The notes under the pieces: model-generated
The model's database searches: none
What the model was told of the DNA's origin: nothing
The model's input: only the letters and a program-made list of their open reading frames with translations
From: Basidiobolus meristosporus CBS 931.73
Taxonomy: Eukaryota; Fungi; Basidiobolomycota
Reading direction: 5' to 3'
DNA: 64,000 bases
NCBI GenBank assembly: GCA_002104905.1
Contig: MCFE01000241.1
Coordinates: 54,262 to 118,261, forward strand
Made by a program: the position numbers and the translations under genes
Part shown: positions 5,291 to 61,200 of the stretch, one piece after another
Position numbering within the stretch: position 1 is the first letter of the stretch
Layout of the letters: each line of letters begins with the position of its first letter

Positions 5291-5299
5291 AATATATTA

Positions 5300-36462: not shown

Positions 36463-36700
36463 GATGGAAGTGTGTCAATTACAGCAGGTGTGCAGATATG
36501 TAGTGATTACTAAGCAGGAGGCCATAATACTTTTTATTCAAACTATATGTGATATACCCATGGCAGTGGTGGGTAAGCAAATCTATAGGGATGAATCTAC
36601 AGTGGAATATATGAGTGCTTCAAGGGGAGGTAGAAAAAGGGCTAGTTACTCACACTGCCACCCTGTGATCTGTACAATAATATTAGTAATACTACAGTGC
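36462..36700 (+). mobile_element. CACTA-like transposase 3' fragment
   Basis: EVCQLQQVC and GGTAAGCAAA..GA..C.ACAGTGGAA..TATGA.TG...AGGGGA.GTAGAAAAAGG match the reverse complement of 25300-25500. Confidence 0.65.
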
Positions 36701-39700: not shown

Positions 39701-40297
39701 AGGATATTAATTGTCTATTTCGACTTGGGAAACCAGTAACTAACCTTATACATGCGCCTAGAGTAGCACCACTCCATTACAGCCAGGCTTGCAAAATGAG
39801 ACCAACCACGAATAGATCATTGGCTCTCGTGGATATACTGGAGTTTTGCTTTATCTATTCCCAATTTTGGCAATAATAACCTTGTGTTCCCAATTTGGTT
39901 CAGTGACAATCCAAACATGGGTATTGGAGAGTAGATCATTGTGACAGCAATTGTGCGATATCGCAACCTACACACGAATACAATACACTAATGAGCACCA
40001 ATAAGGCACAGCATTCCCTCTTGACGAATTGCTTCGAACACCTTCTGATCCTTTGGTTACTTACGGCATTATTGGTGGAAGCATGGTGTGTACACCCATA
40101 TTAGATATAATTGCTTCCACTTTGTTGGAACATGGCTTAGCCATTGAGTGTATTTAAGGCGAGCATTACTAGGGGTGTTGGGTATACAGTACATTGCATT
40201 TTTTACCATCGAGTTGGAAGAGTAATTTGCTTTAGATCATTGAACAACCCGAAGATTGAGCTTTGTGCGCATTCCTACAACTACTTCCTGAAGCAAT

Positions 40298-43200
40298 ATG
40301 CATACATTCCAAACTCCAAGCAAGCCCGCCCAGGTAAGGATTCGAAGTCTTGAGTGTCCGGCCATGTGGTTCACTGGGACGGCAGAGAATCGTGGCTCCT
40401 AACAAACGTGATTTCATTTTGCTAGACTTTAGAGAGCTACCGCAGCGATGTCAGTGACGATATCTTTGAAGACAATGCCAGCATCACGACAATTAACTCC
40501 ACGGGAAATCTAGAAAGGTAGGGGAGAAAGTGGTAATGGAATGATCTCCTGTGTATCTAAGCTAATGTTTCTATCAGTGAATTCGATGCTCCCATGTATC
40601 AAGCGCCATCAGAGTCTAGCTCAGAGACTACGCTTCACTCTGTTGAATCATACAACGAAAACAGAGGCTTGAAGATCCAAGACATTAATCAAAAGTACCA
40701 GGCGCCTGCAGGTGCCATCACACCTGTTTCTCGGGAAGCTGCTCTGCTTCCATCATATGCCCAAAAGCGTCTGTGGATTCTTGCCCAGAGCGATGCAGCC
40801 AGCTACGTCCACCATATGCAAACAGCATTCCGCCTGCGAGGCTCTCTCAATCATGATGCTCTGCAACGTGCTTTGAATACAGTGTTTACTAGGCATGAGT
40901 CACTTCGCTCGGTTTTTGTCACTGTTGACGGCCAGCCCGAAGTTCAACTATTGGATCCTAAATCTGGGTTACCAATGTTCACTTATGATCTTCGGGGAGA
41001 GCTAGATGTTGAAAGATGTCTTCAGGAGTTGCGTGCAAACGAAGTTCGGGTACCTTTTGACCTCATAACAGGTCCATTGATTCGCGCACAATTGATCCAA
41101 CTTGCTCACGATGATCATGTCTTCTTGCTGACACAGCATCACATTGTTACTGACGGTTGGTCCACGAGGCTGTTGATTCGTGAGCTGAGTGCACTATACA
41201 CAGCCTACCGCAATGATCAACCCGATCCATTGGTTCCACTCACCCTTCAGTACCCTGACTATGCAGCCTGGCAAAGAAAGTGGCTGAGTGGTGATAGGCT
41301 TCGGGAACAGTGCGAATTCTGGCGCACCGCACTCGCCGGGGCACCTGTGTCAATCACCCTGCCAACTGATCGGCCTCGTCCTTCTCGACAATCATTTGCA
41401 GGAGCTCGGATGCCAGTTCATGTGAATTCGCATACAACGTTCGCGCTTAAACAGCTAAGTCAGCAGAACGGAGTTACACTTTTCATGACACTTCTCGCTG
41501 CATGGAGTGTTGTGCTATCACGGCTTTCAGGACAAGACGATATAGTAATTGGTACGCCAAATGCCAATCGTAACCATCACGAGCTCGAGCAATTGATCGG
41601 CCTCTTTGTGAACACTCTGGTGCAACGGGTTGATCTTTCGGGTAATCCAAACGTGTCAGAGCTACTAAGGCGGATCCATCAATTTTCTGCAGCAGCTCAA
41701 GCACATCAAGATGTCCCATTCGACCAAGTAGTGGAGATTATGGACCAGAAATCACCTCTTCAGCTGATGTTCGGGTGGCAAAACAATGAAGTGGGGGAAA
41801 TGCACCTGCCTGGAATTAGTGTGGCACCTCAAGGGGTGAGCCATGGCGTTGCTACGTTTGACCTAAGCCTTGAGCTCCGCGAAGATAATGATGAAATTAT
41901 CGGCCATCTTGATTACTCAACTTCGATCTTTGATCGATCCACAATCGATAGACAGATCGGGTATTTCCTGGCCACGTTGCAAGCCATGTTTACCGATGCC
42001 ACACAGTCTATCATCAACATAAATTTACTTTCTTCTTCAGAACAAGAGCTTTTGCTGCAAAAATGGAACACTGCTGATGAGCCATACCCAAACCAATTAT
42101 GTATCCATCAATTGTTTGAGGATCAAGTTGCTCGCTCTCCCGATGCCATCGCTATTGTGTCGGAGTCTCAGACATTGACTTATACTCAAGTCAACGAGCG
42201 TGCTAATCGCCTCGCACATCGCCTCATTGATCTTGGAGTCAAACCGGATACTCTTGTTGCTCTCTGCGTTGAGCGATCCCCGGCGATTGTGATCGGTATA
42301 CTGGCCATCTTGAAGGCCGGTGGTGCCTACTTGCCACTGGATCCAGTGTATGCTAGTGAACGACTGAACGATATTATTTCCGATGCGTCGCCCTCCATTC
42401 TCTTGGCGGATAAGCATGGTCGCAATACTATTGGCGAGGAATCACTCGCTTCGCTAACTGTGATCGATCCCAACGCAGAGTTGGAGGGCTGCCCCTCTGT
42501 AAACCCACAGGTCTCTAGCCTGACCTTGGACAATCTCATCTATATCATCTACACCTCTGGATCCACCGGCAAGCCAAAGGGCGTGATGGTGAAGCATGCC
42601 CACGTCACCCGCCTGTTTGATACGACGGCTCCCTGGTACCAGTTCAACCAAAAGGATGTCTGGTGCTTGTCTCACTCCTACAGCTTTGACGTATCCGTGT
42701 GGGAGCTATGGGGAGCACTTCGCTACGGCGGAAAGCTGGTTGTCCCTAGCCAGAACGTGATCCGCTCGCCTGAAGATATGTACCGCTTGATCTGCGAGCA
42801 AGAAATCACCGTTCTGAATATGACTCCAAGCTCCTTCAAGCCGCTGATTGGTTGCCAAGCGCAGAGTGAACTCAGTGATCGGCTGCGCTTTGTGATCCTT
42901 GCTGGTGAAGCGCTGGAGCCAGCTATTTTGCAACCGTGGTACGCCACGCGCTCCGAGGATTCACCCAAAATAGTGAACATGTATGGGCCCACCGAAATCA
43001 CCGTGTACGCCACCTATCGCGTGATGAAGGCACAGGATTGCTCCCAAGCCGTCAGTCCCATCGGTGTCAGGCTTCCGGATCTGACCACCTATATTCTGGA
43101 TGCTCAGGGTCGCCCTGTGCCTTTGGGTGCTGTTGGGGAGCTGTGTATTGGTGGTGCCGGCGTCACTTGCGGATATCTTCACCGGCCAGAGCTGACGGCC

Positions 43201-46200
43201 GAAAAGTTCCCTCTTGACCCATTTAGCAAGAAACAGGGTGCCCGCATGTACAGGACTGGGGATCTTGTCCGATACTTGTCTGATGGCAGTATCATCTTCC
43301 TGGGTCGTAACGATGACCAAGTCAAGATCCGTGGATTCAGAATTGAGCTTGGTGAGGTTGAGGCACGTCTTGTTGACCATCCCCTCGTGAAGGAAGCAGC
43401 GGTGCTAGCCCTCGGCAATGGTACGGATAAGCGCCTGGTTGCCTATGTGGTCGCTGAGCAGAGCGAAGGTCTCGCTCATTTGCTGCATTCTCATGTTGCC
43501 GAGAAATTGCCGGACTACATGACACCAACAGCATATGTTCGCATGGACAGACTTCCACTGACAGCTAATGGCAAACTCGACCGTCGCGCACTTCCCGAGC
43601 CGGATAGAGACTCCCTTGTCAGTCAGACATACGAAGCCCCTGTGGGCGAGACGGAAACTGCCTTGGCACGCATCTGGGAGGAACTGCTCAACATCAAACA
43701 AGTTGGGCGCCATGACAACTTCTTCATGCTTGGTGGTCACTCTCTACTCGCTGTTCAGCTGATTGAGCGCCTTCATCACAATGGGCTGGGTCTGTCAATT
43801 CGTGCACTGTTTGAGACACCGACCTTGAGTGTACTTGCCCAATCTCTTAATTTAGACCCTATTGCAGTAGCAGCGGCGGCAGAAGCACCATCAAACCTCA
43901 TTATGCCTGACACTACTCAAATTACCCCGGAAATGCTACCACTCATCGACTTGACTCAGTGGGAAATCGACCATATCGTCAATCAAGTCGAAGGAGGAGT
44001 AAGTAATATCCAGGATATCTACGCTCTCACTCCATTGCAAGATGGTATGCTCTTCCATCACATCATGGCAACCAAGGGCGATCCTTACCTTATATATGTT
44101 ATCATGAATTTTGATAACAAAGCTATACTCGATCGCTACTTGGATGCTGTGCAGAAGGTAGTTGATCGCCACGATGTCTTACGAACGGGCATCATGTGGG
44201 AAGGTCTATCCAACCCTGCTCAGGTTGTATTGCGCCACGCGACACCCTTAGTTACCGAACTTGCATTGAACTCAGCAGATGGTCCAATTACCGAGCAACT
44301 CATAAGGCGCATTGATCCTCGTGAGCATCGTATAGACTTGACCCAAGCTCCATTGACTCGTTTCATCATTGCCCAGGATGCTGATGGTCGTTGGGTAGCT
44401 GCTCAATTGCTACACCATACGATTGGTGATCACTCCACTTTTGAAGAAATGAACCACGAAATTGAGGCATTCCTTGGAGGCCGAGGAGGTTTGCTGCCAG
44501 CACCATCTTCATTCCGTAATCTCATTGCACAAACACGCGCAGGACCAAGCGTAGAAGAACATGAGCAGTTTTTTACCAAGATGCTTAGCGGGATTGAGAC
44601 ACCTGCGTTACCGTTTGGACTTTCGGATGTTCATGGTGACGGTTTGAACATCACCGAAAACTACCGTTTGTTGCCTCAAAACCTGAATAATCGCCTGCGC
44701 AGCCTTGCCAAATCGCTGGGAGTCAGTCTTGCGAGTTTGTGTCATCTTGCATGGGCTGGGGTGGTTGCACGAACCAGCGGTCAACAACAAGTTGTGTTTG
44801 GTACTGTGCTCCTGGGACGTATGCAGGCTGGATCAGTGATAGATCGCGCAATGGGTTTGTTCATCAACACATTACCCATACGCATAGATATGGAGAATTC
44901 CAGTGTTGAAGATACTCTCCGCCAAACCCAAATTAGTTTGGCAGCCCTGCTTGAGTATGAGCATGCATCATTGGCAGTGGCACAGCAATGTAGTAGCGTT
45001 CCAGCCGGCATTCCACTTTTCAGTGCCGTGCTGAATTATCGCCATAACAACAAAAAACTCGCAGAAACCACAAAAATGGAGGGGGTAGAGTTCGGCCATG
45101 AACAGGAACGCACGAACTATCCATTCTTAATGAACGTTGAGGATTCTGGGGACTCTTTAGGCTTGACTGCCCAGATCATTCAGTCATTTGATTCGGCTCA
45201 CATCAACGAGTACATGCAGCAAGCGTTGCAAAATCTGGCCGATGCGTTAGAGTTCACCCCGAAGATGCCAGTTAACGAACTTGAAATAATGCCAGTGGAC
45301 GAGCGCAACCTGTTGCTTCATTCGTGGAACACAACTGACGAAATCTACCCGGACCAGTTGTGTATCCATCATCTCTTTGAGCAGCAGGTCTCTCGATCCC
45401 CCGATGCTGTGGCTATTGTGTATGAATCCGTAACCCTGACCTATGCTGAGGTCAACGCATGCGCCAATCGCCTGGCGCATCACCTCATCGCCGTTGGAGT
45501 CAGACCTGACACTCTTGTGGCGATCTGTGTGGAGCGCAGCCCGGCCATGGTCGTAGGCCTGCTGGCGATCCTGAAAGCCGGTGGTGCCTACGTTCCACTC
45601 GATCCAGTGTATGCAAGTGAGCGCCTTGGCCACATCCTCAAGGATGCGGCACCCATTGCTCTGCTTGCCGATGCAGCAGGCTGTGCCGCACTTGGCAAGG
45701 CTGCTATTGCTTCATTGACTGTGATTGACCCGAATGAAGTACCTGATTTGCCAGCCACCAACCCGCATATCCTTGACCTTACCTCCGAGCATCTTGCTTA
45801 TCTGATCTACACCTCTGGCTCCACTGGTACACCCAAGGGTGTAATGATTCCTCACAGCGGCGCGTGCAACTACTTGCACTGGGCAGTGCAAACGTACGCA
45901 CCTAAGCAAGGCTCTGTGGTATCATCATCACTCTCCTTCGACGCGACCGTTACCAGCTTGTGGACCCCGCTTCTTTATGGTAGCACTGTGACACTACTGA
46001 AGTCAGGCGATGAAATGGTGGCACTGGAAGCCTACGTGCGCCAAGCACAGGGTGAGGGCTTGCTGAAGATCACCCCAGCCCACCTTGACCTGATGGGTCG
46101 ACGCCTACAGGCAGATGGAGCGAAAACGCGAGTGGATACGTTCGTAGTTGGTGGAGAAGCGCTGAGTCCTTCGACAGTAGCACTTTGGCGCAGCATTCAG

Positions 46201-49200
46201 CCTGGTGTGCGGATAGTCAACGAGTATGGACCCACAGAAACAGTGGTCGGGTGTTCCGTCTACGACATGAGCACACCACTGGACCAGGCCATCAATGTCC
46301 CCATTGGCCGTCCTATTGCCAACACCCGACTTTACCTATTGGACTCGCACGGGAAGCCGGTACCACTCGGGGCTGTCGGTGAGCTTCATATCGGTGGAGC
46401 TGGTGTCGCACGCGGCTATTTAAACCGCCCCGACTTGACCGCCGAGCGATTCCTACCCGATCCATTCAGCGATAAAGAAGGTTGTCGCATGTACAAGACC
46501 GGAGACCTGGCTCGCTACCTGCCAGATGGCAACTTGGAATATCTAGGCCGTAACGACCACCAAATCAAGATCCGTGGATTCCGAATCGAGCCTGGTGAGA
46601 TTGAGGCTCGTCTCGTCGATCATCCTCTCGTCAAGGAAGCAGCAGTGCTAGCCCTGGGCGAGGGCACCGAGAAACGTTTAGTTGCATATGTGGTTGCTGA
46701 GCACAAGGAGGGCCTTGCTCATTTGCTCCGCACTCATGTTGCTGAGAAGCTGCCCGATTACATGACACCAGCAGCATTTGTTCGCCTGGATGAACTGCCG
46801 TTAACTCCAAATGGCAAGCTCGACCGTCGGGCACTTCCAGAGCCAGACAGCAGCTCTCTCGTCAGCCAGAAATACGAGGCACCAGTGGGCGAGATCGAGA
46901 TCGCCCTGGCTGCCATCTGGGAGGAGCTCCTTAGTATCGAACGAGTCGGTCGTCACGATAACTTCTTCATGCTTGGTGGCCACTCCTTACTTGCCGTGCG
47001 TTTGATGAATCGGGTCTCTGTTCTCGGTATACAGCTTCAGTTGACTTCACTATTCGCCTCACCAATATTGTCTGATCTTGCGAATGTGATTACTAAGCAG
47101 CTATCTCAAGAGGAGCAGGTGTTTGATAGTATCATGCCGGTATCTCGAGGAGCCGCTCTAATGCCATCTTTTGCTCAGCAACGTTTGTGGTTCCTAGCCC
47201 AAATGGAAGATGTCAGCGACATCTATCACATGCCAATGGCGCTCCGCCTGCGCGGTACTCTCGATCGATATGCATTGCAAGGCGCTTTAAATACCATATT
47301 TTCTAGACATGAGTCACTTCGCTCTGTCTTCGTAACCATTGAAGGCCAACCTCAGGTCCAAATCTTAAGCTCTGACTCTGGAATACCCATGCGTGTTCTT
47401 GAGCTTCAGGGCAAGCAAGATTTGGATAGATACGTTCGTGATTTGAGTGTGAATGAGGCTCATGCATCTTTTGACCTTGAACAAGGACCATTGATTCGTG
47501 CACAGTTGATCCAACTTGCTCACGATGATCATGTCTTCTTGCTAACACAGCATCATATTGTCTCGGATGGTTGGTCAATGGGACTGTTGACTCGTGAGCT
47601 GAGTGACCTCTACACAGCATTCCATAATGGTCTACCCGACCCATTAGCCCCACTTACCCTCCAGTACCCCGACTATGCCGCCTGGCAGAGAAAGTGGCTC
47701 AGCGGTGATAGGCTCCAGGAACAAAGCGAGTTCTGGCGCAATGCACTCGCCGGGGCACCTGTGTCAATCACCCTGCCAACTGACCGGCCTCGTCCTTCTC
47801 GGCAATCGTTTGCAGGAGCCCGGATGCCAATTCGTGTGGACTCGCACACAACATTGGCCCTTAAGCGCCTCAGTCAGCAGAATGGAGCAACATTGTTCAT
47901 GACTATCCTGGCAGCATGGAGTGCTGTGCTGTCGCGACTCTCAGGACAAGATGATATAATGATTGGCACACCAAGCGCCAATCGCAACCATCGCGCGATC
48001 GAGCAATTGATCGGATTCTTTGTAAACACCCTGGTTCTTCGCGTTGATCTTTCCGGTAATCCAAGCGGGTTGGAGCTACTGGAGCGTGTCCGTCAATTTG
48101 CAGTGGCTGCCCAAGCTCATCAGGATCTGCCGTTTGACCAAGTGGTGGAGATTACGAAGCCGCCTCGTAGAATGGATCAGACCCCACTCTTCCAAGTGAT
48201 GTTTGCTTGGCAAAATAATGACGAAGGTGAAGTACATCTACCGGGAATAGTGATGTCACCAGCCGAAGTGACCTATGATATTGTCAAGTTTGACCTGGAC
48301 CTTGAGCTGTACGAAGAGAATGACGAGATTATCGGCCATCTTGGGTACTCGACTGCCCTCTTTGAGCAATCCACCATCGAGAGACATATCGGATATTTGC
48401 AAACCATGTTGCAAGCTATAGCCACCGATGCCGGGCAGTCTGTCTCATCAGTGAATCTACTTTCTTCGTCAGAGCAAGAGCTTTTGCTTCATACATGGAG
48501 TACTACCGACAAACCATATCCCGACCATTTATGTATCCATCATCTCTTTGAGGAGCATGTTATTAGCTCTCCCGACTCTGTTGCCGTTGTGTATGAGTCT
48601 CAGTCACTGACCTATGCTGAGGTCAACGAGCGTGCCAATCGCCTCGCCCATCATCTCATTGAGCTCGGAGTTAAACCCGACAGCCTTGTTGCGATCTGCT
48701 TGGAGCGAGGTCCAGCTCTGGTAGTGGGATTACTTGCGATCCTGAAAGCAGGTGGTGCATATGTCCCTCTGGATCCGTCATATGCTAGCGACAGACTAAG
48801 GGACATAATCAGCGATGCTCAACCGGGTATCTTAATAGCCGATACTGTTGGTCAAACAGCACTTGGTGCTAGTGTACTCTCTTCGGTAACTTTATTGGAC
48901 CCACACACTTACTCAGACTATCCCTCCACCAATCCCGATGTCCCCGAGTTAAATTCACACCATCTTGCCTATGTAATTTACACCTCTGGCTCTACTGGTA
49001 AACCCAAGGGCGTCATGGTCGAGCATGAAGGGTTTGTAAACCTTATCAGAACAAGACCGGATGTCTATGGTATCAGACCCTCCAGTCAGGTTATGCAGTT
49101 CTTCTCTTTCAGCTTTGATGGTGGTGCCTTAGAAACCTTTATGGCCATTGGATTGGGTGCTAGCCTACATATGCTACCGGATTATATCCGACTTGATAGA

Positions 49201-52200
49201 GGACTTTTGTGGAATTATTTGGAAAGGAATTCGATCACACAAACCATTTTGACGCCAGCTGTGTTACAAGACTGTAAAGCATTGCCTCCTTTGACCACAT
49301 CGTTGACCCTTGTCATGGCCGGCGAAGCGCTCCCGGCAACACTGCTCCGTACACTTCAGCGATTAATTCCCAACGGTAGAATTATTAACGATTACGGGCC
49401 GACCGAGGCAACTGTCAGTGCTATAGCGTGGAAGTGTCCTCCAAATTTCTCAGACGATATTGTTCCAATCGGTCGCGCGATTACAAACAAGCGAGTCTAC
49501 CTTCTGGATGCTTTTGGACAACCTGTACCATTAGGAGCAGTAGGTGAAATGTATATTGGAGGAGTAGGAGTGGCAAGAGGCTATCTCAATAGACCTGAAT
49601 TGACCGCACAGAGTTTCTTGGCTGATCCATTCAGCGATAAAGAAGGTTGCCGCATGTACAAGACCGGAGACCTGGCTCGCTACCTGCCAGATGGCAACTT
49701 GGAATATCTGGGCCGTAACGACCACCAAATCAAGATCCGTGGATTCCGAATCGAGCCTGGTGAGATTGAGGCTCGTCTCGTCGATCATCCTCTCGTCAAG
49801 GAAGCAGCAGTGCTAGCCCTGGGCGAGGGCACCGAGAAACGTTTAGTTGCATATGTGGTTGCTGAGCACAAGGAAGGCCTTGCTCATTTGCTCCGCACTC
49901 ATGTTGCTGAGAAGCTGCCCGATTACATGACACCAGCAGCATTTGTTCGCCTGGATGAACTGCCGTTAACTCCAAATGGCAAGCTCGACCGTCGGGCACT
50001 TCCAGAGCCAGACAGCGGCTCTCTCGTCAGCCAGAAATACGAGGCACCAGTGGGCGAGATCGAGACCGCCCTGGCTGCCATCTGGGAGGAGCTCCTTAAT
50101 ATCGAACGAGTCGGTCGTCACGATAACTTCTTCATGCTTGGTGGTCATTCCCTACTCGCTGTACAGCTGATTGAACGTCTTCGTCGCGTTGATCTTGGTT
50201 TATCTGTTCGCGCCCTGTTCGAGACCCCTACTTTGAGTGTTTTAGCCGAATCTCTTAATGGAGACCAAGTAGCCATCACCTCTACTCTAGCAGTACCTCC
50301 GAACCTTATTAAACCCGGCACCACCACGATCACTCCAGAAATGCTGCCGCTTATCAACTTGACCCAGAATGACATCGATCACATTGCAAATCACGTCAAA
50401 GGTGGAGTAAGTAATATCCAAGATATCTATGCTCTGGCTCCATTACAAGACGGCATGCTGTTCCATCATATCATGGCCACCAAAGGTGATCCTTATTTAC
50501 TTTATGTTATCATGGCCTTTGATAACATAACTATACTCGATCGCTACCTAAATGCTGTGCAGAAGGTGGTTGACCGCCATGATATTTTGCGCACTGGTAT
50601 TATGTGGGAAGGTCTATCAAGCCCTGCTCAAGTTGTATTACGTCAGGCGACTCTATCTGTTACTGAGCTACCTCTTAACCCAGCAGACGGTCCTATTATT
50701 GAGCAACTCGCAAAGCGCGTGGATCCTCGAGAACATTCCATTGACTTGACCCAAGCTCCATTGACTCGTTTCATCATTGCCCAAGAGGGTAATGGCCGTT
50801 GGATCGCAGCCCAATTGCTGCATCACACTATTGGTGACCACTCCACACTTGAGGAAATGAATCGTGAAATTGAGACTTTCCTTAAAGGCCCAGAAGAAAC
50901 TTTGCCTGCGCCTTCCTCCTTCCGTAATCTGATTGCCCAAACACGCAAAGGACCTAGTGTTGAAGCACATGAACGTTTCTTTACGGAAATGCTTGCGGAG
51001 ATTGAAACACCAGCATTGCCTTTTGGATTATCTGATGTTCACGGTAATGGTGGAAATATCACCCAGTCCTACCGCTTGCTGCCACAGAGTCTGAACAACC
51101 GTCTTCGTAGTCAAGCTAAGTCGATGGGCGTTAGTCTTGCTACTATGTGCCACCTTGCTTGGGCCCAGGTAATTGCTCGAACTAGTGGACAGCAGCAAGT
51201 TGTGCTTGGTACGGTGCTATTTGGACGTATGCATGCGGGATCTGGCGCAGATCGCGCAATGGGACTATTCATCAACACGCTACCGATTCGCATAGACATG
51301 AAAAATGCTAGTGTGCAGGATACTGTGCACCAAACTCAGACCAGTTTAGCAGCGTTGCTTGAATATGAACATGCATCCTTGGCACTGGCGCAACGGTGCA
51401 GTAATGTTCCAGCCGGTATTCCGCTCTTCAGTGCCCTTTTGAACTATCGCCATAACAGCACTCAACTGGACACTGAGACTACCATATTGGAAGGTGTTGA
51501 ATTCCTTCAAGAACAAGAGCGCACTAACTATCCATTCTTAATGAATGTAGAAGACTTTGGGGACTCACTTGGCTTGACCGCTCAAATTGTTCAGCCTTAC
51601 GATTCGAATCGCATCATCAATTATATGCAGCAAGCCTTACAGAGCATAGCCGATGCGTTGGAGTTCACGCCCATGATGCCAATTAATGAGCTCGATGTCT
51701 TGCCTATAGATGAACGCAACTTGGTACTTGATACATGGAACATCACCGATGGCCCATATCCAGACCATTTATGCGTCCATCAACTATTCGAGGAACAGGT
51801 CTCTCGTTCCCCGAACGCCATCGCTGTTGTGTCGGAATCTCAGACACTGACCTATGCTGAGGTCAACGAGCGTGCCAATCGCCTCGCCCATCATCTCATT
51901 GAGCTCGGAGTCAAGCCTGACACCCTTGTTGCACTCTGCGTAGAGCGTTCCGTTGCAATCGTCATTGGAATACTGGCCATCTTGAAGGCTGGTGGCGCTT
52001 ACTTGCCACTGGACCCGGTGTATGCTAGTGAACGACTCAACGATATTGTTTCCGATGCGTCGCCCTCCATTCTCTTGGCGGACGAGCATGGTGGCAACAC
52101 TATTGGTGAAGCATCACTCGCTTCACTGACGGTGGTCGACCCCAATGCGCAGTTCGAAGAACACCCCGCCACCAACCCACAAGTCACCAGCCTGACCTCG

Positions 52201-55200
52201 CATCACCTTGCCTACGTCATCTACACCTCTGGATCCACTGGAAAGCCTAAGGGTGTGATGGTGGAGCACGCACAGGTCACTCGCCTGTTTGATGCAACGG
52301 CCGCCTGGTACCAGTTCAACGAAAACGATGTCTGGTGCCTGCTGCACTCGTACAGCTTCGATTTCTCCGTGTGGGAGTTGTGGGGTGCTCTGCGATATGG
52401 TGGTAAGTTGGTGCTCCCATCCCACCATGTCACTCGTTCCTCCGAGGACCTCTATGAACTGATCTGTGAGCAAGGCATCACCGTGCTGAACCTTACCCCG
52501 AGCGCCTTCAAGCCGCTGATTGCGTGCCACGCGCAAAGTGAGCTCCAGGACCAATTGCGCTACGTGATCTTCGGAGGGGAGGCCCTCGAGCCGGCCATCC
52601 TGCAGCCATGGTACGCCACCCGATCTGAACACTCCCCCAAGATCGTGAACATGTATGGCATCACGGAGACCACAGTCCATGTCACCTACCGTGTGATGAA
52701 GAAGACGGACTGCACACAGGCGATTAGTCCCATTGGTGCAAGAATCCCTGATCTGACCACGTACATCCTGGACACTCGCGGCAATCCCGTGCCTATGGGA
52801 GTGGTTGGCGAGCTGTACATCGGAGGTGCTGGTGTCACCCGTGGATACCTGAACCGACCAGAGCTGACAGCTGAACGGTTCCCACTTGACCCATTCAGCA
52901 AGACGCCAGGTGCTCGCATGTACCGGACTGGTGACCTCGGTCGCTACCAAAGTGATGGCAGCCTCATCTTTTTGGGTCGTAACGATCATCAAGTCAAGAT
53001 CCGCGGTTTCCGTATTGAACTCGGGGAGATTGAGGCTCGTCTTGTTGATCACCCACTGGTCAAAGAAGCAGCGGTACTTGCAGTCGGTGACGACTCTGAC
53101 AAGCGTCTAGTTGCATATGTTGTTGCTGCACACGAGGAGGAACTTGCGCATTTGCTTCGCTCTCATGTGGCAGAAAAACTACCTGATTACATGACCCCAG
53201 CAGCGTTTGTTCGTATGGATAAATTTCCGCTAACGGCGAATGGTAAGCTCGACCGTCGTGCCCTTCCAGAGCCCGATAGCGACTCTCTCGTCAGCCAGAA
53301 ATACGAGGCACCTGTGGGTGAGATCGAAACTGCACTAGCGAGTATTTGGGAGGAGCAACTCAACGTCACTCGAGTCGGGCGTCATGACAACTACTTTATG
53401 CTTGGTGGACATTCTCTGCTTGCTGTACAGCTGATTGAACGCCTTCGTCGTATTGGACTTGGTTTGTCTATCCGTGCTTTGTTTGACACTCCTACCTTAA
53501 GCGTACTCGCCCAATCTATTAATCATGACAATGTAGCTGTAGCAGCAGCAGCAGCCACGCCATCCAACCTTATTAATCCTGACACCACCGAAATATTCCC
53601 AGCAATGCTTCCTCTGATCGATCTGACCCAGAGTGACATTGATCATATTGTCAATCAGGTTGAAGGAGGCGTTAGTAATATTCAAGATATCTATGCCCTG
53701 GCTCCATTACAGGATGGCATGCTGTTCCATCATATCATGTCGACTAAGGGTGATCCGTACCTGCTCATCAGTGCTATTGCCTTCGATAGCAGAGCGGTAC
53801 TCAATGAATACCTGAGTGCTGTGCAGAAGGTGATCGATCGTCACGACATCTTGCGCACGAGCATTATGTGGGAAGGCCTTTCCACTCCTGCTCAGGTTGT
53901 GTTGCGCCACGCGACTTTGTCCTTCACCGAGCTGTCGCTCAACTCATCCGATGGCCCTATTGTGGAGCAACTGAAGCAACGGTTCGATCCTCGGGAACAT
54001 CGTATGGATTTAACTCGAGCCCCTTTGTTGCGTTATGTGGCTGCCCAGGATGATGATGGTAGATGGATAGTGATTGAATTGATGCATCACATCATTGATG
54101 ACAATACTTCAGTGCAGCTAATGTACATGGAGATCCAAGCATTCATGGATGGTGAAGGTGACTCACTACCATCACCACAACCGTTCCGTAACCTCATTGC
54201 ACAAGCTCGTGCAGGACCCAATGTCGAGGCACATGAGCGTTTCTTCACCCAGATGCTTGGCGAAATCGACACGCCAGCCTTGCCTTTTGGGCTGTCAGAT
54301 GTGCACGGTGAGGGCCTAGATATCACTGAAACCCAACTATGGCTACCACAAGATTTGAACAAACGCCTTCGTAGCCAAGCTAGATCCATGGGTGTTAGTC
54401 TTGCCAGCTTATGCCATCTGGCTTGGGCACAGGTGATTGCTAGAACTAGTGGACAGCAACAAGTAGTGTTTGGCACCGTGCTCTTCGGACGTATGAATGC
54501 CGGCTCAGGCCTAAAGAGTACAATGGGTCCGTTCATCAATACCTTACCACTTCGCATTGGCATGGACGCCAGCAGTATTCTCGATACTGTGCGAAAGACT
54601 CACGCCACTCTAGCCGCTTTGATGGAGCATGAATACGCATCATTAACGCTGGCACAAAGGTGCAGTAGTGTCCCCTCAGGCACCCCAATGTTTAGTGCAC
54701 TTTTGAACTACCGTCATAATATGCAAGTATCCAATGAGGATACAAGAATTGCTGGCATTGAACACTTGGAAGGGCAAGAGCGCACTAATTATCCATTCGT
54801 CATGTCTGTAGAAGACTTTGGGGACACACTCGGAGTAACTGCTCAGGTCGTACAGCCATATGATTCAGTACGCATTGCAGAGTACATGAAGCAAGCCTTA
54901 CAAAACCTGGCAAGTGCTTTGGAGTGCTCACCTACAATGGCCGCTCAAGAATTGGAAGTCTTGGCTATAGAGGAGCGTAACCTGTTGCTTCATTTATGGA
55001 ATACAGCTGACGAAGCCTATCCCAACCAATTATGTATCCATCAATTGTTTGAGGATCAAGTTGTTCGCTCTCCCGATGCCATCGCTATTGTGTCGGAGTC
55101 TCAGACATTGACTTATACTCAAGTCAACGAGCGTGCTAATCGCCTCGCACATCGCCTCATTGATCTTGGAGTCAAACCGGATACTCTTGTTGCTCTCTGC

Positions 55201-58200
55201 GTTGAGCGATCCCCGGCGATTGTGATCGGTATACTGGCCATCATGAAGGCCGGTGGTGCCTACTTGCCACTGGATCCAGTGTATGCTAGTGAACGACTGA
55301 ACGATATTATTTCCGATGCGTCGCCCTCCATTCTCTTGGCGGATAAGCATGGTCGCAATACTATTGGCGAGGAATCACTCGCTTCGCTAACTGTGATCGA
55401 TCCCAACGCAGAGTTGGAGAGCTGCCCCTCTGCAAACCCACAGGTCTCTAGCCTGACCTTGGACAATCTCATCTATATCATCTACACCTCTGGATCCACC
55501 GGCAAGCCAAAGGGCGTGATGGTGAAGCATGCCCACGTCACCCGCCTGTTTGATACGACGGCTCCCTGGTACCAGTTCAACCAAAAGGATGTCTGGTGCT
55601 TGTCTCACTCCTACAGCTTTGACGTATCCGTGTGGGAGCTATGGGGAGCACTTCGCTACGGCGGAAAGCTGGTTGTCCCTAGCCAGAACGTGATCCGCTC
55701 GCCTGAAGATATGTACCGCTTGATCTGCGAGCAAGAAATCACCGTTCTGAATATGACTCCAAGCTCCTTCAAGCCGCTGATTGGTTGCCAAGCGCAGAGT
55801 GAACTCAGTGATCGGCTGCGCTTTGTGATCCTTGCTGGTGAAGCGCTGGAGCCAGCTATTTTGCAACCGTGGTACGCCACGCGCTCCGAGGATTCACCCA
55901 AAATAGTGAACATGTATGGGCCCACCGAAATCACCGTGTACGCCACCTATCGCGTGATGAAGGCACAGGATTGCTCCCAAGCCGTCAGTCCCATTGGTGT
56001 CAGGCTTCCGGATCTGACCACCTATATTCTGGATGCTCAGGGTCGCCCTGTGCCTTTGGGTGCTGTTGGGGAGCTGTGTATTGGTGGTGCCGGCGTCACT
56101 TGCGGATATCTTCACCGGCCAGAGCTGACGGCCGAAAAGTTCCCTCTTGACCCATTTAGCAAGAAACAGGGTGCCCGCATGTACAGGACTGGGGATCTTG
56201 TCCGATACTTGTCTGATGGCAGTATCATCTTCCTGGGTCGTAACGATGACCAAGTCAAGATCCGTGGATTCAGAATTGAGCTTGGTGAGGTTGAGGCACG
56301 TCTTGTTGACCATCCCCTCGTGAAGGAAGCAGCGGTGCTAGCCCTCGGCAATGGTACGGATAAGCGCCTGGTTGCCTATGTGGTCGCTGAGCAGAGCGAA
56401 GGCCTCGCTCATTTGCTGCATTCTCATGTTGCCGAGAAATTGCCGGACTACATGACACCAACAGCATATGTTCGCATGGACAGACTTCCACTGACAGCTA
56501 ATGGCAAACTCGACCGTCGCGCACTTCCCGAGCCGGATAGAGACTCCCTTGTCAGTCAGACATACGAAGCCCCTGTGGGCGAGACGGAAACTGCCTTGGC
56601 ACGCATCTGGGAGGAACTGCTCAACATCAAACAAGTTGGGCGCCATGACAACTTCTTCATGCTTGGTGGTCACTCTCTACTCGCTGTTCAGCTGATCGAA
56701 CGTCTCCGTCGCATTGGCCTTGGGTTGTCTGTTCGTGCCTTGTTCGACACCCCTACGCTGAGTGTAATTGCCCAATCTCTCAACCGTGACCGTGTTGCTG
56801 TAGCAGCTTCGGCAGTGGCACCACCAAACCTCATCACACCTGACACCACCGAGATCACCCCGGAGATGCTTCCACTGATCGACTTGACTCAGGACGACAT
56901 TGATCATATTGTCAACCAGGTTGAAGGAGGGGTTAGCAATATTCAAGACATTTATGCTCTGGCTCCATTACAAGACGGTATGCTGTTCCATCATATCATG
57001 CTCACTAAGGGTGATCCTTACGTGATCAATGTGATCATGGCTTTTGACAACAGAGCTATACTCGATCGCTACTTGGATGCTGTGCAGAAGGTGGTGGATC
57101 GCCATGATATCTTGCGTACTGGGATTATGTGGGAAGGCTTATCCACGCCTGCTCAAGTTGTACTACGTCACGCGACTCTCTCGGTCACTGAGCTTGTATT
57201 GAACCCAGCTGATGGCTCAATTGTTGAGCAACTCACAAAGCGCGTGGACCCTCGAGAGCACCGTATCGACTTGACCCAAGCTCCATTGACCCGTTTCATC
57301 ACTGCTCAGGATATTGATGGACGTTGGGTAGCTGCTCAATTGCTACACCATACGATTGGTGATCACTCCACCCTCGAAGAAATGAATTATGAAATTGAGT
57401 CGTTCCTTGGGGGTAGAGGGGAGACACTACCTGTCCCTTCACCTTTCCGCAACCTCATCGCCCAGGCGCGTGCGGGACCTGGTGTCGAGGAACAAGAACG
57501 ATTCTTCACAAAAATGCTTGGAGAGATTGACACACCTGCCTTGCCTTTTGGACTGACAGATGTTCACGGGAATGGCTTCAATTTAACCGATTGCTACATA
57601 TCACTGCCACAAGACTTAAATGATAGCCTTCGTAATCACGCCAAGAAGCTGGGGGTCAGTCTTGCAAGTATGTGTCACCTGGCTTGGGCGCAGGTGATTT
57701 CCCGAACCAGCGGACAACAGAGAGTAGTGTTTGGCACGGTGCTCTTTGGGCGTATGCAGGCTGGATCCGGTGCAGATCACGCAATGGGATTGTTTATTAA
57801 TACACTTCCAATTCGTATTGACATGGAAAATATCAGCGTCCAAGAATCTATCCTCCAGACCCAAGCCTCTTTAGCCGCCTTGATGGATCATGAGCATGCA
57901 TCTTTGGCACTAGCCCAGAGATGTAGTAGTGTTCCCTCTGGCACTCCAATGTTCAGCGCCCTTTTGAACTACCGTCACAATAAGCAAGTAGCTGGCGGGG
58001 ACGCAAAAATCGATGGTATCGAGTATCTTGATGGGCAAGAGCGTACCAACTATCCATTCACTATGTCTGTAGAAGATGGAGGAGTATCATTGGGATTAAC
58101 TGCTCAAGCTGTTCGCCCATATGATTCGTCTCGCATTTGTAACTACATGCAGCAGGCTCTACAGAGTCTAGATGAGGCTTTGAATCATGCACCGAACACA

Positions 58201-61200
58201 TCAGTCGGAGACCTTGAGATCTTGCCTACGGATGAACGCCACTTATTAATTCAATCGTGGAATGATACTGATAAGCCTTGTCCTCATCACATACGTGTTC
58301 ACCAGCTGTTTGAGAATCAGGTGGACCAAACTCCAGATGCCATCGCCGTTGTCTACAGAGATCAGGCTTTGACTTTCCGGGAACTGAATGCACGCGCTAA
58401 CTGGTATGCGCAGCAGCTTAAGGCACTTGGTATCCAACCGGGAGACTTTATTGCTACCCTACTGAAGAGATCCACTGAGCTGATTGTCATGCAAATTGCG
58501 ATTCTCAAGGTCGGAGCTGCCTACGTTCCGATCGATCCGAAGGCACCTGCCGATCGTCAAGCATTTATTATTGACGATTGTGCAGCACGGCTGTTGGTTA
58601 CCACCGAAAATACTCAAATCCCATCCGTGCTTAATACACCGCTGCTTCGTTTAAGTGACAACCCGGATAGTACAGACATAATTATCGATGCTCCGAATGT
58701 GATCTCTAGTGGTTCCAGCGTAGCCATCGCATATGCAATGTACACTTCTGGCTCCACAGGAATTCCCAAAGGCGTGCTTGTACCACATCGAGCAATCGTA
58801 CGCCTGACTATCAACAACGGTTATGCGAACGTTGGACCGGACGATCGTGTCGCGTTTGCTGCCAATCCTGCATTTGATGCAAGTACATTTGAAATCTGGG
58901 CGCCACTGCTCAATGGCGGCCAAGTGGTGATTATTGATGCGGACACGTTTACGGACTCGGTCCTAATGGCAGAAGCGATTGATAGACATCACATCACTAC
59001 TCTCTTCCTGACAACAGTGCTTTTCAATCAATTCGTCTTATCTATGGGTTCGACCTTGGCTAAGCTGAGATATCTTCTCTGTGGAGGAGAGCAAGAAAGC
59101 CTAGAGTCTTTCGCCACTCTTCTGAAATACGGAGGGCCTGAGCACCTCATCCATTGCTATGGACCTACCGAGACCACAACGTTTGCCACTACGTATGAGG
59201 TAACGAGTATTGATCACATACAAGGTCGCTTGCCTATCGGTCGGCCTATTTCCAAAACAAGTGTCTATGTATTAGATCAACATGGTCATCCAGTGCCATT
59301 AGGGGTTGTGGGAGAGCTTTACATTGGTGGTACAGGAGTTGCAAATGGCTACCTCAACCGAGCTGACCTATCAGCAGAACGCTTCCTTCCTGATCCGTTC
59401 AGTACGTGCGAGGGGAATCGTATGTACAGAACAGGCGATTTGGTGCGCTTCTTACCCGATGGTAATTTAGTATTTGTAAGCCGTAACGATCATCAAGTCA
59501 AAATCCGTGGATTCCGTATTGAACTCGGCGAAATTGAAGCTCGTCTTATTGAGCACCCTCTTGTTAACGAAGTAGCAGTACTTGCGATCGGCAATGGTGC
59601 GGATAAGCGCCTGGTTGCCTATGTGGTCGCTGAGCAGAGCGAAGGCCTCGCTCATTTGCTGCATTCTCATGTTGCCGAGAAATTGCCGGACTACATGACA
59701 CCAACAGCATATGTTCGCATGGACAGACTTCCACTGACAGCTAATGGCAAACTCGACCGTCGCGCACTTCCCGAGCCGGATAGAGACTCCCTTGTCAGTC
59801 AGACATACGAAGCCCCTGTGGGCGAGACGGAAACTGCCTTGGCACGCATCTGGGAGGAACTGCTCAACATCAAACAAGTTGGGCGCCATGACAACTTCTT
59901 CATGCTTGGTGGTCACTCTCTACTCGCTGTTCAGCTGATCGAACGTCTCCGTCGCATTGGCCTTGGGTTGTCTGTTCGTGCCTTGTTCGACACCCCTACG
60001 CTGAGTGTAATTGCCCAATCTCTCAACCGTGACCGTGTTGCTGTAGCAGCTTCAGCAGTGGCACCACCGAACCTCATCACACCTGACACCACCGAGATCA
60101 CCCCGGAGATGCTTCCACTGATCGACTTGACTCAGGACGACATTGATCATATTGTCAACCAGGTTGAAGGAGGGGTTAGCAATATTCAAGACATTTATGC
60201 TCTGGCTCCATTACAAGACGGTATGCTGTTCCATCATATCATGGCGACCAAAGGCGATCCTTACCTGATCTTCGGTATCATGGCCTTTGCGGATAAGCAT
60301 ATTCTCACTCGATACTTGGATGCTGTGCAGAAGGTGGTGGATCGCCATGATATCTTGCGTACTGGGATTATGTGGGAAGGCTTATCCACGCCTGCTCAAG
60401 TTGTACTACGTCACGCGACTCTCTCGGTCACTGAGCTTGTATTGAACCCAGCTGATGGCTCAATTGTTGAGCAACTCACAAAGCGCGTGGACCCTCGAGA
60501 GCACCGTATCGACTTGACCCAAGCTCCATTGACCCGTTTCATCACTGCTCAGGATATTGATGGTCGCTGGATAGCTGCTCATCTCCTACATCATGCCATT
60601 GGTGATCACTCTGCCGCCGATGAAATGAACCATGAAATCGAGGCGATCCTGGATGGTCGAGCAGACCTGCTCCCGGCACCATCCTCTTTCCGTAATCTCA
60701 TTGCACAAGCACGAGTAGGACATAGTGTTGAGGCACACGAGCGTTTCTTCACTGAGATGCTTTCCGAGATAGAAACGCCAGCATTGCCTTTTGGGTTGTC
60801 CGATGTTCATGGTAACGGTCACAATATCACTGAGGCCTACTGTTTACTACCCCAGGGCCTGAACAACCGCCTTCGTAGTCAAGCCAAGTCGATGGGCGTT
60901 AGTCTTGCTAGTATATGCCATCTTGCATGGGCTCAGGTAATTGCCCGAACTAGTGGACAGCAGCAAGTTGTGTTTGGTACGGTGCTCTTTGGACGTATGC
61001 AGGCTGGATCTGGTGCAGATCGTGCCATGGGATTGTACATCAACACGCTACCGATTCGTATCGATGTAGATAACGCCAGTGTTCAGGATACAGTGCGTCA
61101 GACCCAAGCCTCATTAGCAGCCTTGATGGATCATGAGCACGCATCCCTGGCACTAGCCCAGAGATGTAGTAGTGTTCCCTCTGGTATCCCCATGTTCAGC

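What the first reader, a model, noticed from the sequence alone, without database searches (positions are those of the whole stretch)
40298..40593. Two small spliced exons add a 48-aa eukaryotic leader to the intron-free NRPS body
Seen: ATG 40298 (A at -3, in-frame TGA just upstream) gives [27 protein letters not shown] (40334-40425) and GTAGGG..GCTAAT..CAG (40518-40577) are canonical introns with branch points. Splicing both yields [36 protein letters not shown] in frame with the ATG at 40594 (36+92+16 = 144 nt). Inferred: the gene is domesticated in a eukaryotic nucleus, with introns confined to a new low-complexity N-terminus. This argues against bacterial contamination, and the ORF-track start is probably not the true start.
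Basis: partly seen in the sequence, partly recalled or inferred. Interest (0 to 1): 0.75.

Follow-up and report, generated by a model that had tools for sequence, protein, structure and literature searches.

The report
Spliced fungal leader on bacterial-type NRPS
Two short introns and two small exons really do seem to give this giant, bacterial-type peptide-synthetase gene of the fungus Basidiobolus meristosporus a fungal-style start, but the public gene model already has exactly this start and this kind of gene make-over after transfer is already described.

Summary
ATG 40298 starts exon 1 (36 nt). Intron 1 is 92 nt (GTAAGG..CTAAC..TAG), exon 2 is 92 nt, and intron 2 is 60 nt (GTAGGG..CTAAT..CAG). 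Exon 3 joins in frame to the 21.4-kb ORF and adds 48 residues.

Three lines of evidence support real splicing:
- The public gene model (P0049) starts with exactly this leader.
- Under fungal-type splice criteria, set after seeing the model, it is the only model in the 500 nt upstream. Only 0.35% of shuffles give a two-intron model.
- The homologous locus in Basidiobolus ranarum (dS about 1) keeps the ATG, both exon lengths (36 and 92 nt), the open frame, both donors, both acceptors and the intron 1 branch point. Its intron lengths differ (94 and 77 nt), and retaining either intron gives stops.

No transcript data could be checked.

The first 78 residues are Ser/Thr-rich and acidic, match no family, and are poorly conserved. 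NRPS homology begins at a "scar": an A-T linker joined to a T-C linker, with the carrier domain missing. B. ranarum shares this scar.

Side finding: the stop at 61959 and the model's four 3' "introns" reflect single-base frameshifts.

The parts
39998..40135 (+). Upstream non-coding block conserved with B. ranarum. It may be a promoter or 5'-flank element; no function is shown.
   Evidence: blastn gives 69.5% identity over 141 nt to L001 3430-3570.
40133..40297 (+). ATG-free stretch ahead of the start codon, probably the 5' UTR region. It includes the in-frame TGA at 40289-40291.
   Evidence: The last upstream ATG is at 40132. The TGA is read directly from the sequence.
40298..40333 (+). Exon 1, 36 nt, encoding [12 protein letters not shown]. 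The start codon has A at -3.
   Evidence: The exon is 29/36 nt identical to B. ranarum and the same length there (MHTFETSNKDAQ). It is the start of public model P0049.
40334..40425 (+). Intron 1, 92 nt, phase 0: GTAAGG ... CTAAC (23 nt from the 3' end) ... TAG.
   Evidence: B. ranarum has GTAAGG, CTAAC at the aligned position and CAG, with a length of 94 nt. Retention gives stops in both species.
40426..40517 (+). Exon 2, 92 nt, encoding [30 protein letters not shown] plus 2 nt of a split Ser codon.
   Evidence: Only this frame is open in the window, and it is also open in B. ranarum (where one other frame is open too). The length there is the same 92 nt, with 55/92 nt identity and 9/30 identical residues by hand count.
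40518..40577 (+). Intron 2, 60 nt, phase 2: GTAGGG ... CTAAT (12 nt from the 3' end) ... CAG. It contains the in-frame TAA at 40558.
   Evidence: B. ranarum has GTAAGA...CTGAC...TAG with a length of 77 nt.
40578..40683 (+). First part of exon 3. It encodes the non-NRPS, Ser/Thr-rich acidic sequence (S)[35 protein letters not shown] and contains the ORF-track ATG at 40594.
   Evidence: There is no family match. It is alignable with B. ranarum SELDTAMARVPSET..., and the MAFFT alignment places a 15-nt and a 3-nt gap here.
40684..40719 (+). Remnant of an A-T linker ([12 protein letters not shown]), the left side of the deletion scar.
   Evidence: BLASTP to the internal A2-T2 linker [12 protein letters not shown]. 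The same holds in B. ranarum.
40714..42057 (+). T-C linker plus a complete first condensation domain (LCL-like, with HHIVTDG intact).
   Evidence: Pfam PF00668 covers residues 54-488 of the ORF and profile positions 8-456 of 456. It is 69% identical to the internal C3, starting at ORF residue 41.
40594..61959 (+). Continuous 7121-codon ORF. The architecture is C-A-T-E/C-A-T-C-A-T-(E/C-A-T)x3-E/C followed by the start of A7.
61928..63610 (+). Module-7 region carrying four single-base indels (at about 61928, 62271, 62738 and 63610) relative to the intact 93%-identical copy at 51535-54237. The first indel causes the stop at 61957-61959.
   Evidence: dN/dS is 0.14 with no stops in the corrected frame. 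The public model bridges the indels with 62-, 100-, 20- and 62-nt 'introns'.

Best explanation
The stretch 40298-40593 is the true, eukaryote-style 5' end of a bacterial-type, multi-module NRPS gene of Basidiobolus meristosporus.

How it works:
- Transcription probably starts within the ATG-free 165 nt upstream.
- Two short U2-type GT-AG introns (92 and 60 nt) are spliced out.
- Translation starts at ATG 40298, so the enzyme carries 48 more residues than the ORF call suggests.

The N-terminus:
- With the next 30 residues, the first 78 residues form a Ser/Thr-rich, acidic and probably disordered N-terminus with no NRPS ancestry.
- NRPS homology begins at a junction where an A-T linker is fused to a T-C linker and the carrier domain is missing.

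Inferred history (not shown):
- An ancestral assembly-line gene, closest to those of endofungal Burkholderiaceae, was truncated at an internal module boundary.
- It was then joined to fungal 5' sequence that supplies a promoter, a start codon and promoter-proximal introns.
- This happened before B. meristosporus and B. ranarum split.

Likely role of the leader:
- Its length, frame and splice signals are under selection, but its amino-acid sequence hardly is.
- Its main role is therefore more likely at the gene or mRNA level, providing a start site and 5'-proximal splicing that helps express a very long, otherwise intronless message.
- A structured protein domain is the less likely reading.
For: 1. 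The motifs and the arithmetic are exact.

2. Public model P0049 is encoded by this window and begins [21 protein letters not shown]...[12 protein letters not shown].

3. Contig L001 from B. ranarum (JASJQH010001590.1) has the same structure:
- ATG, then a 36-nt exon 1 followed by GTAAGG.
- A 94-nt intron 1 with CTAAC at the aligned position and a CAG acceptor.
- A 92-nt open exon 2 followed by GTAAGA.
- A 77-nt intron 2 ending in TAG.
- An exon 3 that continues in frame.

4. Exon lengths are identical in the two species. Intron lengths differ by 2 and 17 nt. Retaining either intron gives early stops in both species.

5. The two loci are far apart. dS is about 1.0 and dN/dS is 0.21 in the adjoining C domain. 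Shared signals therefore reflect constraint rather than recent ancestry.

6. Under strict splice criteria it is the only model in the window. Only 0.35% of shuffles give a two-intron model.

7. There is no ATG in the 165 nt (window) or 149 nt (L001) upstream of the start. Both starts have A at -3.

8. The leader has no NRPS remnant and no Pfam match.

9. The scar is confirmed in both species.

10. A paralogous bacterial-type NRPS gene of the same genome (P0098, locus L002) has its own unrelated low-complexity leader. In the public model, three small 5' exons encode it.
Against: - No RNA-seq, cDNA or protein data could be examined, so splicing and use of ATG 40298 are inferred.
- The public model is not independent proof. 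Its four 3' 'introns' are artefacts that bridge frameshifts, and one is only 20 nt long.
- The leader's amino-acid sequence is poorly conserved. Exon 2 has 9/30 identical residues by hand count, with no excess of third-position change. Coding constraint therefore shows only as frame and length conservation.
- The internal ATG (40594) is also conserved in B. ranarum, and the B. ranarum annotation starts elsewhere, at an ATG inside intron 2.
- Both donors have G rather than T at position +6.
- Only one other species could be compared, and its contig may hold a paralogue rather than the strict orthologue.
- The expression-adaptor role is speculation.
Confidence: 0.8

Rival explanations
1. The introns are real, but the leader is functionally a 5' UTR. 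Translation, or an alternative transcript that starts inside intron 2, begins at ATG 40594, and the 48 extra residues are not part of the working enzyme.
For: - The ATG at 40594 is conserved in B. ranarum, where it has a good context (GCCATGG).
- The leader's amino-acid sequence is barely constrained.
- The B. ranarum annotators chose a downstream start.
Against: - After splicing, ATG 40298 is the first AUG and has A at -3.
- It is in frame with no stop in both species.
- Exon lengths of 36 and 92 nt are exactly conserved, while the flanking introns change length by amounts that are not multiples of 3.
- Neither frame nor length would need to be kept in a UTR.
Confidence: 0.1
2. The motifs are a chance GT..AG arrangement that an ab initio gene finder also picked. 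The gene is transcribed from a promoter within 40300-40590 and starts at ATG 40594.
For: - 82 loose GT..AG in-frame paths exist in the 500 nt upstream.
- The public model demonstrably contains false introns at its 3' end.
- The strict criteria were chosen after the fact.
Against: - The same ATG, exon lengths, frame and splice signals recur in B. ranarum at a dS of about 1.
- Only 0.35% of shuffles give a comparable two-intron model in a single species.
- The CTAAC branch point sits at the aligned position in both species.
Confidence: 0.06
3. The locus is a decaying pseudogene, and its 5' structure, real or not, no longer matters. The frameshifts in module 7 would be the sign of decay.
For: There are four single-base frameshifts in the last 2.1 kb and a premature stop at 61959.
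Against: - 21.4 kb of uninterrupted ORF precedes the frameshifts.
- The frameshifted module has dN/dS 0.14 against its intact copy, with no stops in the corrected frame.
- Three of the four indels lie in homopolymer runs, which is typical of assembly error.
- The C1 domain has dN/dS 0.21 against B. ranarum.
Confidence: 0.04

Closest known systems
Horizontally acquired bacterial-type NRPS genes of Basidiobolus (Tabima et al. 2020, PMC7466969)
   Same: - Same organism and gene class: a 'surfactin-like', multi-A-domain NRPS.
- The best non-self matches are Mycetohabitans and Mycoavidus (endofungal Burkholderiaceae) and Mortierellaceae fungi, at 53-60% identity.
- The paper reports few or no introns in HGT candidates (median 0) and notes that some gained introns.
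   Different: - The paper gives intron counts only. It does not describe this gene's 5' structure, the conserved leader exons or the carrier-domain deletion scar.
- I could not map this gene to one of its model numbers. The seven-A-domain models 307892 and 343011 are candidates.
Mortierella alpina MpcA/MpbA bacterial-like NRPS (Wurlitzer et al., bioRxiv 10.1101/2020.08.21.262279)
   Same: - A zygomycete NRPS of (endo)bacterial ancestry with dual E/C domains and the HH[I/L]xxxxGD motif.
- It is adapted to eukaryotic mRNA processing by introns.
- Its N-terminus was remodelled from an LCL-type C domain.
   Different: - The Mortierella genes have nine introns spread along the gene and an N-terminally truncated, HH-less starter C domain.
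- Here the body is intron-free, both introns sit in a non-NRPS leader, and the first C domain is complete with HHIVTDG intact.
Intron gain and acquisition of fungal sequence by bacteria-derived xenologs in fungi (Da Lage et al. 2013, cited; Ciach et al. 2024, PMC11291939)
   Same: This is the general phenomenon. Transferred genes start intronless, acquire introns with time, and sometimes gain host-derived terminal regions.
   Different: - Here the introns did not arise inside the transferred coding sequence.
- They came with, or arose in, a new 5' extension.
- Whether that DNA was a pre-existing fungal exon or non-coding DNA is unknown.
Paralogous Basidiobolus NRPS P0098 (MCFE01000681.1) and the Benniella NRPS N-termini
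   Same: A low-complexity, Ser/Thr-rich leader sits ahead of a bacterial-type NRPS body. In P0098 it is encoded by three small 5' exons (21, 49 and 94 nt) with 94-111-nt GT-AG introns.
   Different: - There is no sequence similarity to this leader.
- That leader joins a truncated C domain, not a complete one.
- Its exon structure is taken from the public model only and was not tested.

Membership tests
U2-type spliceosomal GT-AG introns of fungi | GT donor with a GTRNG-like extension and a YAG acceptor | tested here: met
   The window has GTAAGG..TAG and GTAGGG..CAG. B. ranarum has GTAAGG..CAG and GTAAGA..TAG.
U2-type spliceosomal GT-AG introns of fungi | Branch-point CTRAY close to the 3' end, and a short length (about 50-110 nt) | tested here: met
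   - In the window, CTAAC lies 23 nt and CTAAT 12 nt from the intron 3' ends.
- In B. ranarum, CTAAC lies 25 nt and CTGAC 34 nt from the 3' ends.
- Intron lengths are 92/60 nt and 94/77 nt.
- For comparison, the modelled P0098 introns are 94-111 nt.
U2-type spliceosomal GT-AG introns of fungi | Removal restores one open frame, and retention breaks it | tested here: met
   Retaining either intron gives stops in both species. The spliced frame is open in both.
U2-type spliceosomal GT-AG introns of fungi | Position and phase conserved in a related species, with indels tolerated in the introns but not in the exons | tested here: met
   Exons are 36 and 92 nt in both species. Introns are 92 vs 94 nt and 60 vs 77 nt. 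dS is about 1 between the loci.
U2-type spliceosomal GT-AG introns of fungi | Spliced junctions seen in transcripts | not testable with these tools
   No transcript collection for this fungus was available.
Bacterial-type NRPS acquired by zygomycete fungi | Repeated C-A-T modules that include dual E/C domains (HH[ILMV]xxxxGD near the domain start) | tested here: met
   Pfam gives C, A, AMP-binding_C and PP-binding. There are five [17 protein letters not shown] motifs, six TSGSTG motifs and six GGHS motifs.
Bacterial-type NRPS acquired by zygomycete fungi | Nearest relatives are bacterial (Burkholderiaceae) rather than Dikarya NRPS | tested here: inconclusive
   The best hits are Mycetohabitans, Mycoavidus, Photorhabdus, and the Benniella and Mortierella fungi, at 53-60% identity. 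No phylogeny was built, so neither donor nor direction is shown here.
Bacterial-type NRPS acquired by zygomycete fungi | Residence in fungal chromosomal DNA | tested here: met
   The gene is contiguous with about 36 kb of DNA at GC 0.35-0.42 with few ORFs. It has conserved spliceosomal introns, and a homologous locus occurs in a second Basidiobolus assembly.
Lipoinitiation starter C (Cs) domain | The first C domain belongs to the Cs clade and is not an elongation LCL domain | tested here: not met
   C1 is 69% identical to the internal C3 from the T-C linker onward. The Mycetohabitans Cs-type N-termini look different. No C-domain tree was made.
N-terminal targeting signal or NRPS docking domain | A recognisable family match, or signal-like composition | tested here: not met
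   Pfam finds nothing at E up to 10 for exon 2 or the pre-C part of exon 3 in either species. Of the first 78 residues, 14 are acidic, 4 basic and 21 Ser/Thr. That composition does not resemble a signal peptide or a mitochondrial presequence, which is my inference from composition.

The most novel reading that the evidence does not exclude
The leader is a recurrent 'expression adaptor'. On this reading, bacterial-type NRPS genes that entered zygomycete fungi became expressible only after capturing a host 5' module made of a promoter, a start codon and promoter-proximal introns inside a disposable disordered leader. This would have happened independently in several genes: here, in P0098, and in the Benniella and Mortierella genes. 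Alternatively, the 78-residue acidic leader replaces the lost upstream module as a docking element that feeds the orphan first C domain in trans.
Probability: 0.2. Interest if true: 0.5.

Novelty: already known. Interest (0 to 1): 0.25.

Why it matters
The gene start matters in practice. Anyone who expresses or annotates this synthetase from the ORF alone would lose 48 residues and miss its real promoter region. The B. ranarum annotation does appear to mis-start its copy.

The locus is also a tidy, comparatively validated example of how a bacterial-type gene is fitted with a eukaryotic 5' end. In the part held by this window, the credible introns sit only in a non-bacterial leader. That leader abuts a visible truncation scar left by a deleted carrier domain.

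It rules out contamination for this locus. It adds no new principle beyond published work on Basidiobolus and Mortierella NRPS transfer and on intron gain in xenologs.

Tried and rejected
- Remnants of an upstream NRPS module in window bases 1-40700: tblastn at E up to 10 found only the self-match. The leader is therefore not visibly decayed A-domain sequence.
- Other long proteins that carry the leader: a word search with P0049 residues 1-110 returned only P0049 itself. That search sees only proteins of about 4,300-13,600 residues that share exact words.
- Close orthologues of the first 400 residues: only B. ranarum fragments turned up, P0121 (an internal T-C-A piece) and P0231 (the 5' end). 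No other Basidiobolus genome could be reached.
- Pfam on the leader pieces and on ten ORFs in 36.4-39.9 kb found nothing.
- Similarity between this leader and the leaders of P0098 and the Benniella, Mortierella and Mycoavidus proteins: none.
- A per-segment global alignment with lenient gap costs over-gapped and was not used.
- Scan notes searched for intron consensus gave nothing usable.
Full report
**What is in the sequence**

The finding's description is exact.
- ATG 40298 has A at -3, and an in-frame TGA lies 9 nt upstream.
- Exon 1 is 36 nt and encodes [12 protein letters not shown].
- Intron 1 (40334-40425, 92 nt) reads GTAAGG...CTAAC...TAG.
- Exon 2 (40426-40517, 92 nt) encodes [30 protein letters not shown] plus two bases.
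- Intron 2 (40518-40577, 60 nt) reads GTAGGG...CTAAT...CAG. It contains the in-frame TAA (40558) that closes the long ORF upstream.
- Exon 3 starts at 40578 and runs in frame into the ATG at 40594. That ATG heads a continuous 7121-codon ORF ending at 61959.
- The leader is 48 codons.

**Organism and gene**

- Notes from the scan name the genome as Basidiobolus meristosporus. A paralogue found here (P0098) carries that name in NCBI, in assembly GCA_002104905.1.
- The ORF encodes C-A-T-E/C-A-T-C-A-T-(E/C-A-T)x3-E/C-A.... It has five dual E/C signatures ([17 protein letters not shown]), six A-domain cores and six carrier serine motifs.
- The best non-self matches, at 53-60% identity, are NRPS of Mycetohabitans, Mycoavidus and Photorhabdus and of the fungi Benniella and Mortierella.
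- This is the class of bacterial-type NRPS that Tabima et al. 2020 (PMC7466969) reported as horizontally acquired in Basidiobolus. Their HGT candidates have a median of zero introns. I built no tree, so the donor is not shown here.
- GC content is 0.35-0.42 over the first 36 kb, which holds few ORFs. It is about 0.50 over the gene.

**Is the splice model more than chance?**

- Loose GT..AG paths into the ORF are common. There are 82 in the 500 nt upstream.
- Fungal-type criteria were then applied: donor GT[AG][AGT]G, a YAG acceptor, and CTRAY 8-40 nt upstream of it.
- Of 2000 dinucleotide-preserving shuffles, 4.6% give any such model and 0.35% give a two-intron one.
- These criteria were set after seeing the model, so this is only supporting evidence.

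**Public annotation**

- The protein collection holds a 7764-residue model encoded by this window (P0049).
- This means the structure is already annotated, but it is not independent proof.
- The same model continues past the stop at 61959 through four GT-AG 'introns' of 62, 100, 20 and 62 nt. Each one removes conserved domain sequence exactly where the DNA has a single-base indel relative to the intact, 93%-identical module copy at 51535-54237.
- A 20-nt intron is not credible, so these four are frameshift-bridging artefacts.

**Comparative test (the key evidence)**

The word search with the first 400 residues found a Basidiobolus ranarum fragment, P0231. It shares the unusual pre-C-domain sequence. 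Its 5.5-kb contig is L001 (JASJQH010001590.1), and it aligns with the window from about 300 nt upstream of the ATG into the C domain.

B. ranarum has the following:
- ATG at 3746, then a 36-nt exon 1 (MHTFETSNKDAQ) followed by GTAAGG.
- A 94-nt intron 1 with CTAAC at the aligned position and a CAG acceptor.
- A 92-nt exon 2 that is open in the same frame, followed by GTAAGA.
- A 77-nt intron 2 ending in TAG.
- An exon 3 that reads (S)ELDTAMARVPSET..., against (S)[13 protein letters not shown]... in the window.

How the two loci compare:
- Exon lengths are identical.
- Intron lengths differ by 2 and 17 nt.
- Retaining either intron gives early stops in both species.
- In exon 2, the predicted frame is the only one open in the window, and it is also open in B. 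ranarum.
- In the MAFFT alignment, the gaps in the non-NRPS part of exon 3 are 15 and 3 nt long.
- The strict enumeration recovers the same model in L001.
- The adjoining C domains differ by dS of about 1.0, with dN/dS 0.21. Unconstrained sequence between these loci should be largely randomised.

At that divergence, retention of the ATG, both donors, both acceptors, the intron 1 branch point, the exon lengths and the frame indicates selection on a spliced, translated 5' end.

The B. ranarum public model instead starts at an ATG inside intron 2 (MVSASELD...), which is probably a mis-start.

**Start codon**

- There is no ATG in the 165 nt before 40298 in the window, or in the 149 nt before the B. 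ranarum ATG.
- Both starts have A at -3.
- If the transcript starts in that stretch, 40298 is the first AUG and is in frame after splicing.
- The internal ATG (40594) is also conserved, so a minority reading remains: a shorter protein, or a leader that works only as a UTR.

**What the leader is**

- The leader has no detectable NRPS remnant and no Pfam match.
- It has no similarity to the leaders of other fungal NRPS.
- The first 78 residues contain 21 Ser/Thr, 14 acidic and 4 basic residues.
- Conservation at the amino-acid level is low. Exon 2 is 55/92 nt identical, with 9/30 identical residues by hand count and no third-position excess.
- So the length, frame and signals are constrained, but the sequence is not.

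**The scar**

- NRPS homology starts with [12 protein letters not shown], which matches the A-T linker [12 protein letters not shown] of module 2.
- It is followed at once by [21 protein letters not shown], which matches the T-C linker and the start of C3.
- The roughly 78-residue carrier domain between them is missing.
- B. ranarum has the same junction.
- C1 is complete. It covers Pfam profile positions 8-456 of 456, is 69% identical to C3, and has HHIVTDG intact.
- This confirms another first-stage note on this window.
- It implies that the gene's 5' end arose by truncation at an internal module boundary, before the two species split.
- How an LCL-type first C domain with no upstream carrier gets its donor substrate is open.

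**Mechanism proposed**

Shown:
- The anatomy of the leader.
- Its conservation in a second species.
- The scar.
- The absence of NRPS ancestry in the leader.

Inferred:
- The introns are spliced and ATG 40298 is used.
- The 5' module (promoter region, start codon and two promoter-proximal introns in a dispensable disordered leader) was acquired in the fungus.
- It mainly serves expression of a very long, otherwise intronless message.

In line with a general pattern, the paralogue P0098 has its own unrelated low-complexity leader. Its public model places this in three small 5' exons (21, 49 and 94 nt; introns 109, 111 and 94 nt) ahead of a truncated C domain. Mortierella mpcA and mpbA carry nine introns and remodelled N-terminal C domains. 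Intron gain and acquisition of host sequence by xenologs in early-diverging fungi are documented.

**Side result**

- The 'stop' at 61957-61959 follows a one-base deletion in a C run.
- Three further single-base indels follow. In all, three of the four indels are in homopolymer runs.
- The affected module has dN/dS 0.14 against its intact copy and no stops in the corrected frame.
- These indels are therefore assembly errors or very recent lesions. The gene is longer than 7121 codons and runs off the window.

Exons were translated and scanned separately by reference.
- The joined form was used only as the database protein P0049, by its id.
- Exons were also concatenated inside scripts, but only to check reading frames.
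- A search of sequence collections for the exon-exon junction was not made.
- No transcript data were available.

**Verdict**

My confidence is about 0.8 that this is the spliced, translated 5' end.
- The splice structure is already in the public gene model, and the phenomenon is published for this genus and for Mortierella. Novelty is therefore low and interest modest.

Noticed in passing
window 61856-63658 (indels at about 61928, 62271, 62738 and 63610): Module 7 is a 93%-identical copy of 51535-54237 with four single-base indels, three of them in homopolymer runs. The first indel creates the stop at 61959. The public model bridges the indels with GT-AG 'introns' of 62, 100, 20 and 62 nt. 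dN/dS is 0.14 with no stops in the corrected frame, so these are likely assembly errors or very recent lesions. The gene continues past the window end.
   Followed up: yes
window 40684-40760: Deletion scar: an A-T linker (QKYQAPAG) is fused directly to a T-C linker ([20 protein letters not shown]), and the carrier domain is missing. B. ranarum shares it. The complete LCL-type first C domain therefore has no upstream carrier in cis.
   Followed up: yes
L001 3746-4061 (B. ranarum JASJQH010001590.1): The B. ranarum public model P0231 (K7432_014315) starts at an ATG inside intron 2. Conserved exons 1 and 2 are left unannotated.
   Followed up: yes
L001, in the C domain (4205-5351): The C domain of this contig has a one-base deletion relative to the window. 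The deletion fits with the domain being called as two genes (4031-4897 and 4939-5355).
   Followed up: partly
L002 6001-6506 (B. meristosporus MCFE01000681.1): Paralogue P0098 has a different low-complexity leader. In its public model, three small 5' exons (21, 49 and 94 nt; introns 109, 111 and 94 nt; donors GTATGT, GTAAGA and GTAAGA) encode it, ahead of an N-terminally truncated C domain. Its GNIT.PSS-type leader resembles the N-termini of the Benniella NRPS models.
   Followed up: partly
window 39998-40135: A block 160-300 nt upstream of the start codon is 69.5% identical to L001 3430-3570. It may be a conserved promoter element. B. ranarum has a TATAAAA 74 nt before its ATG, and the window has no strict TATA match.
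   Followed up: partly
window 1-36000: About 36 kb of DNA at GC 0.35-0.42 with few ORFs lies directly upstream of the gene. One 130-nt piece (21965-22094) is 71% identical to L001 411-540, so related repeat-like sequence also lies upstream of the B. ranarum copy.
   Followed up: no
window 36440-39876: This stretch between the AT-rich block and the gene has GC of 0.42-0.46. Pfam finds no domain in ten of its ORFs.
   Followed up: partly
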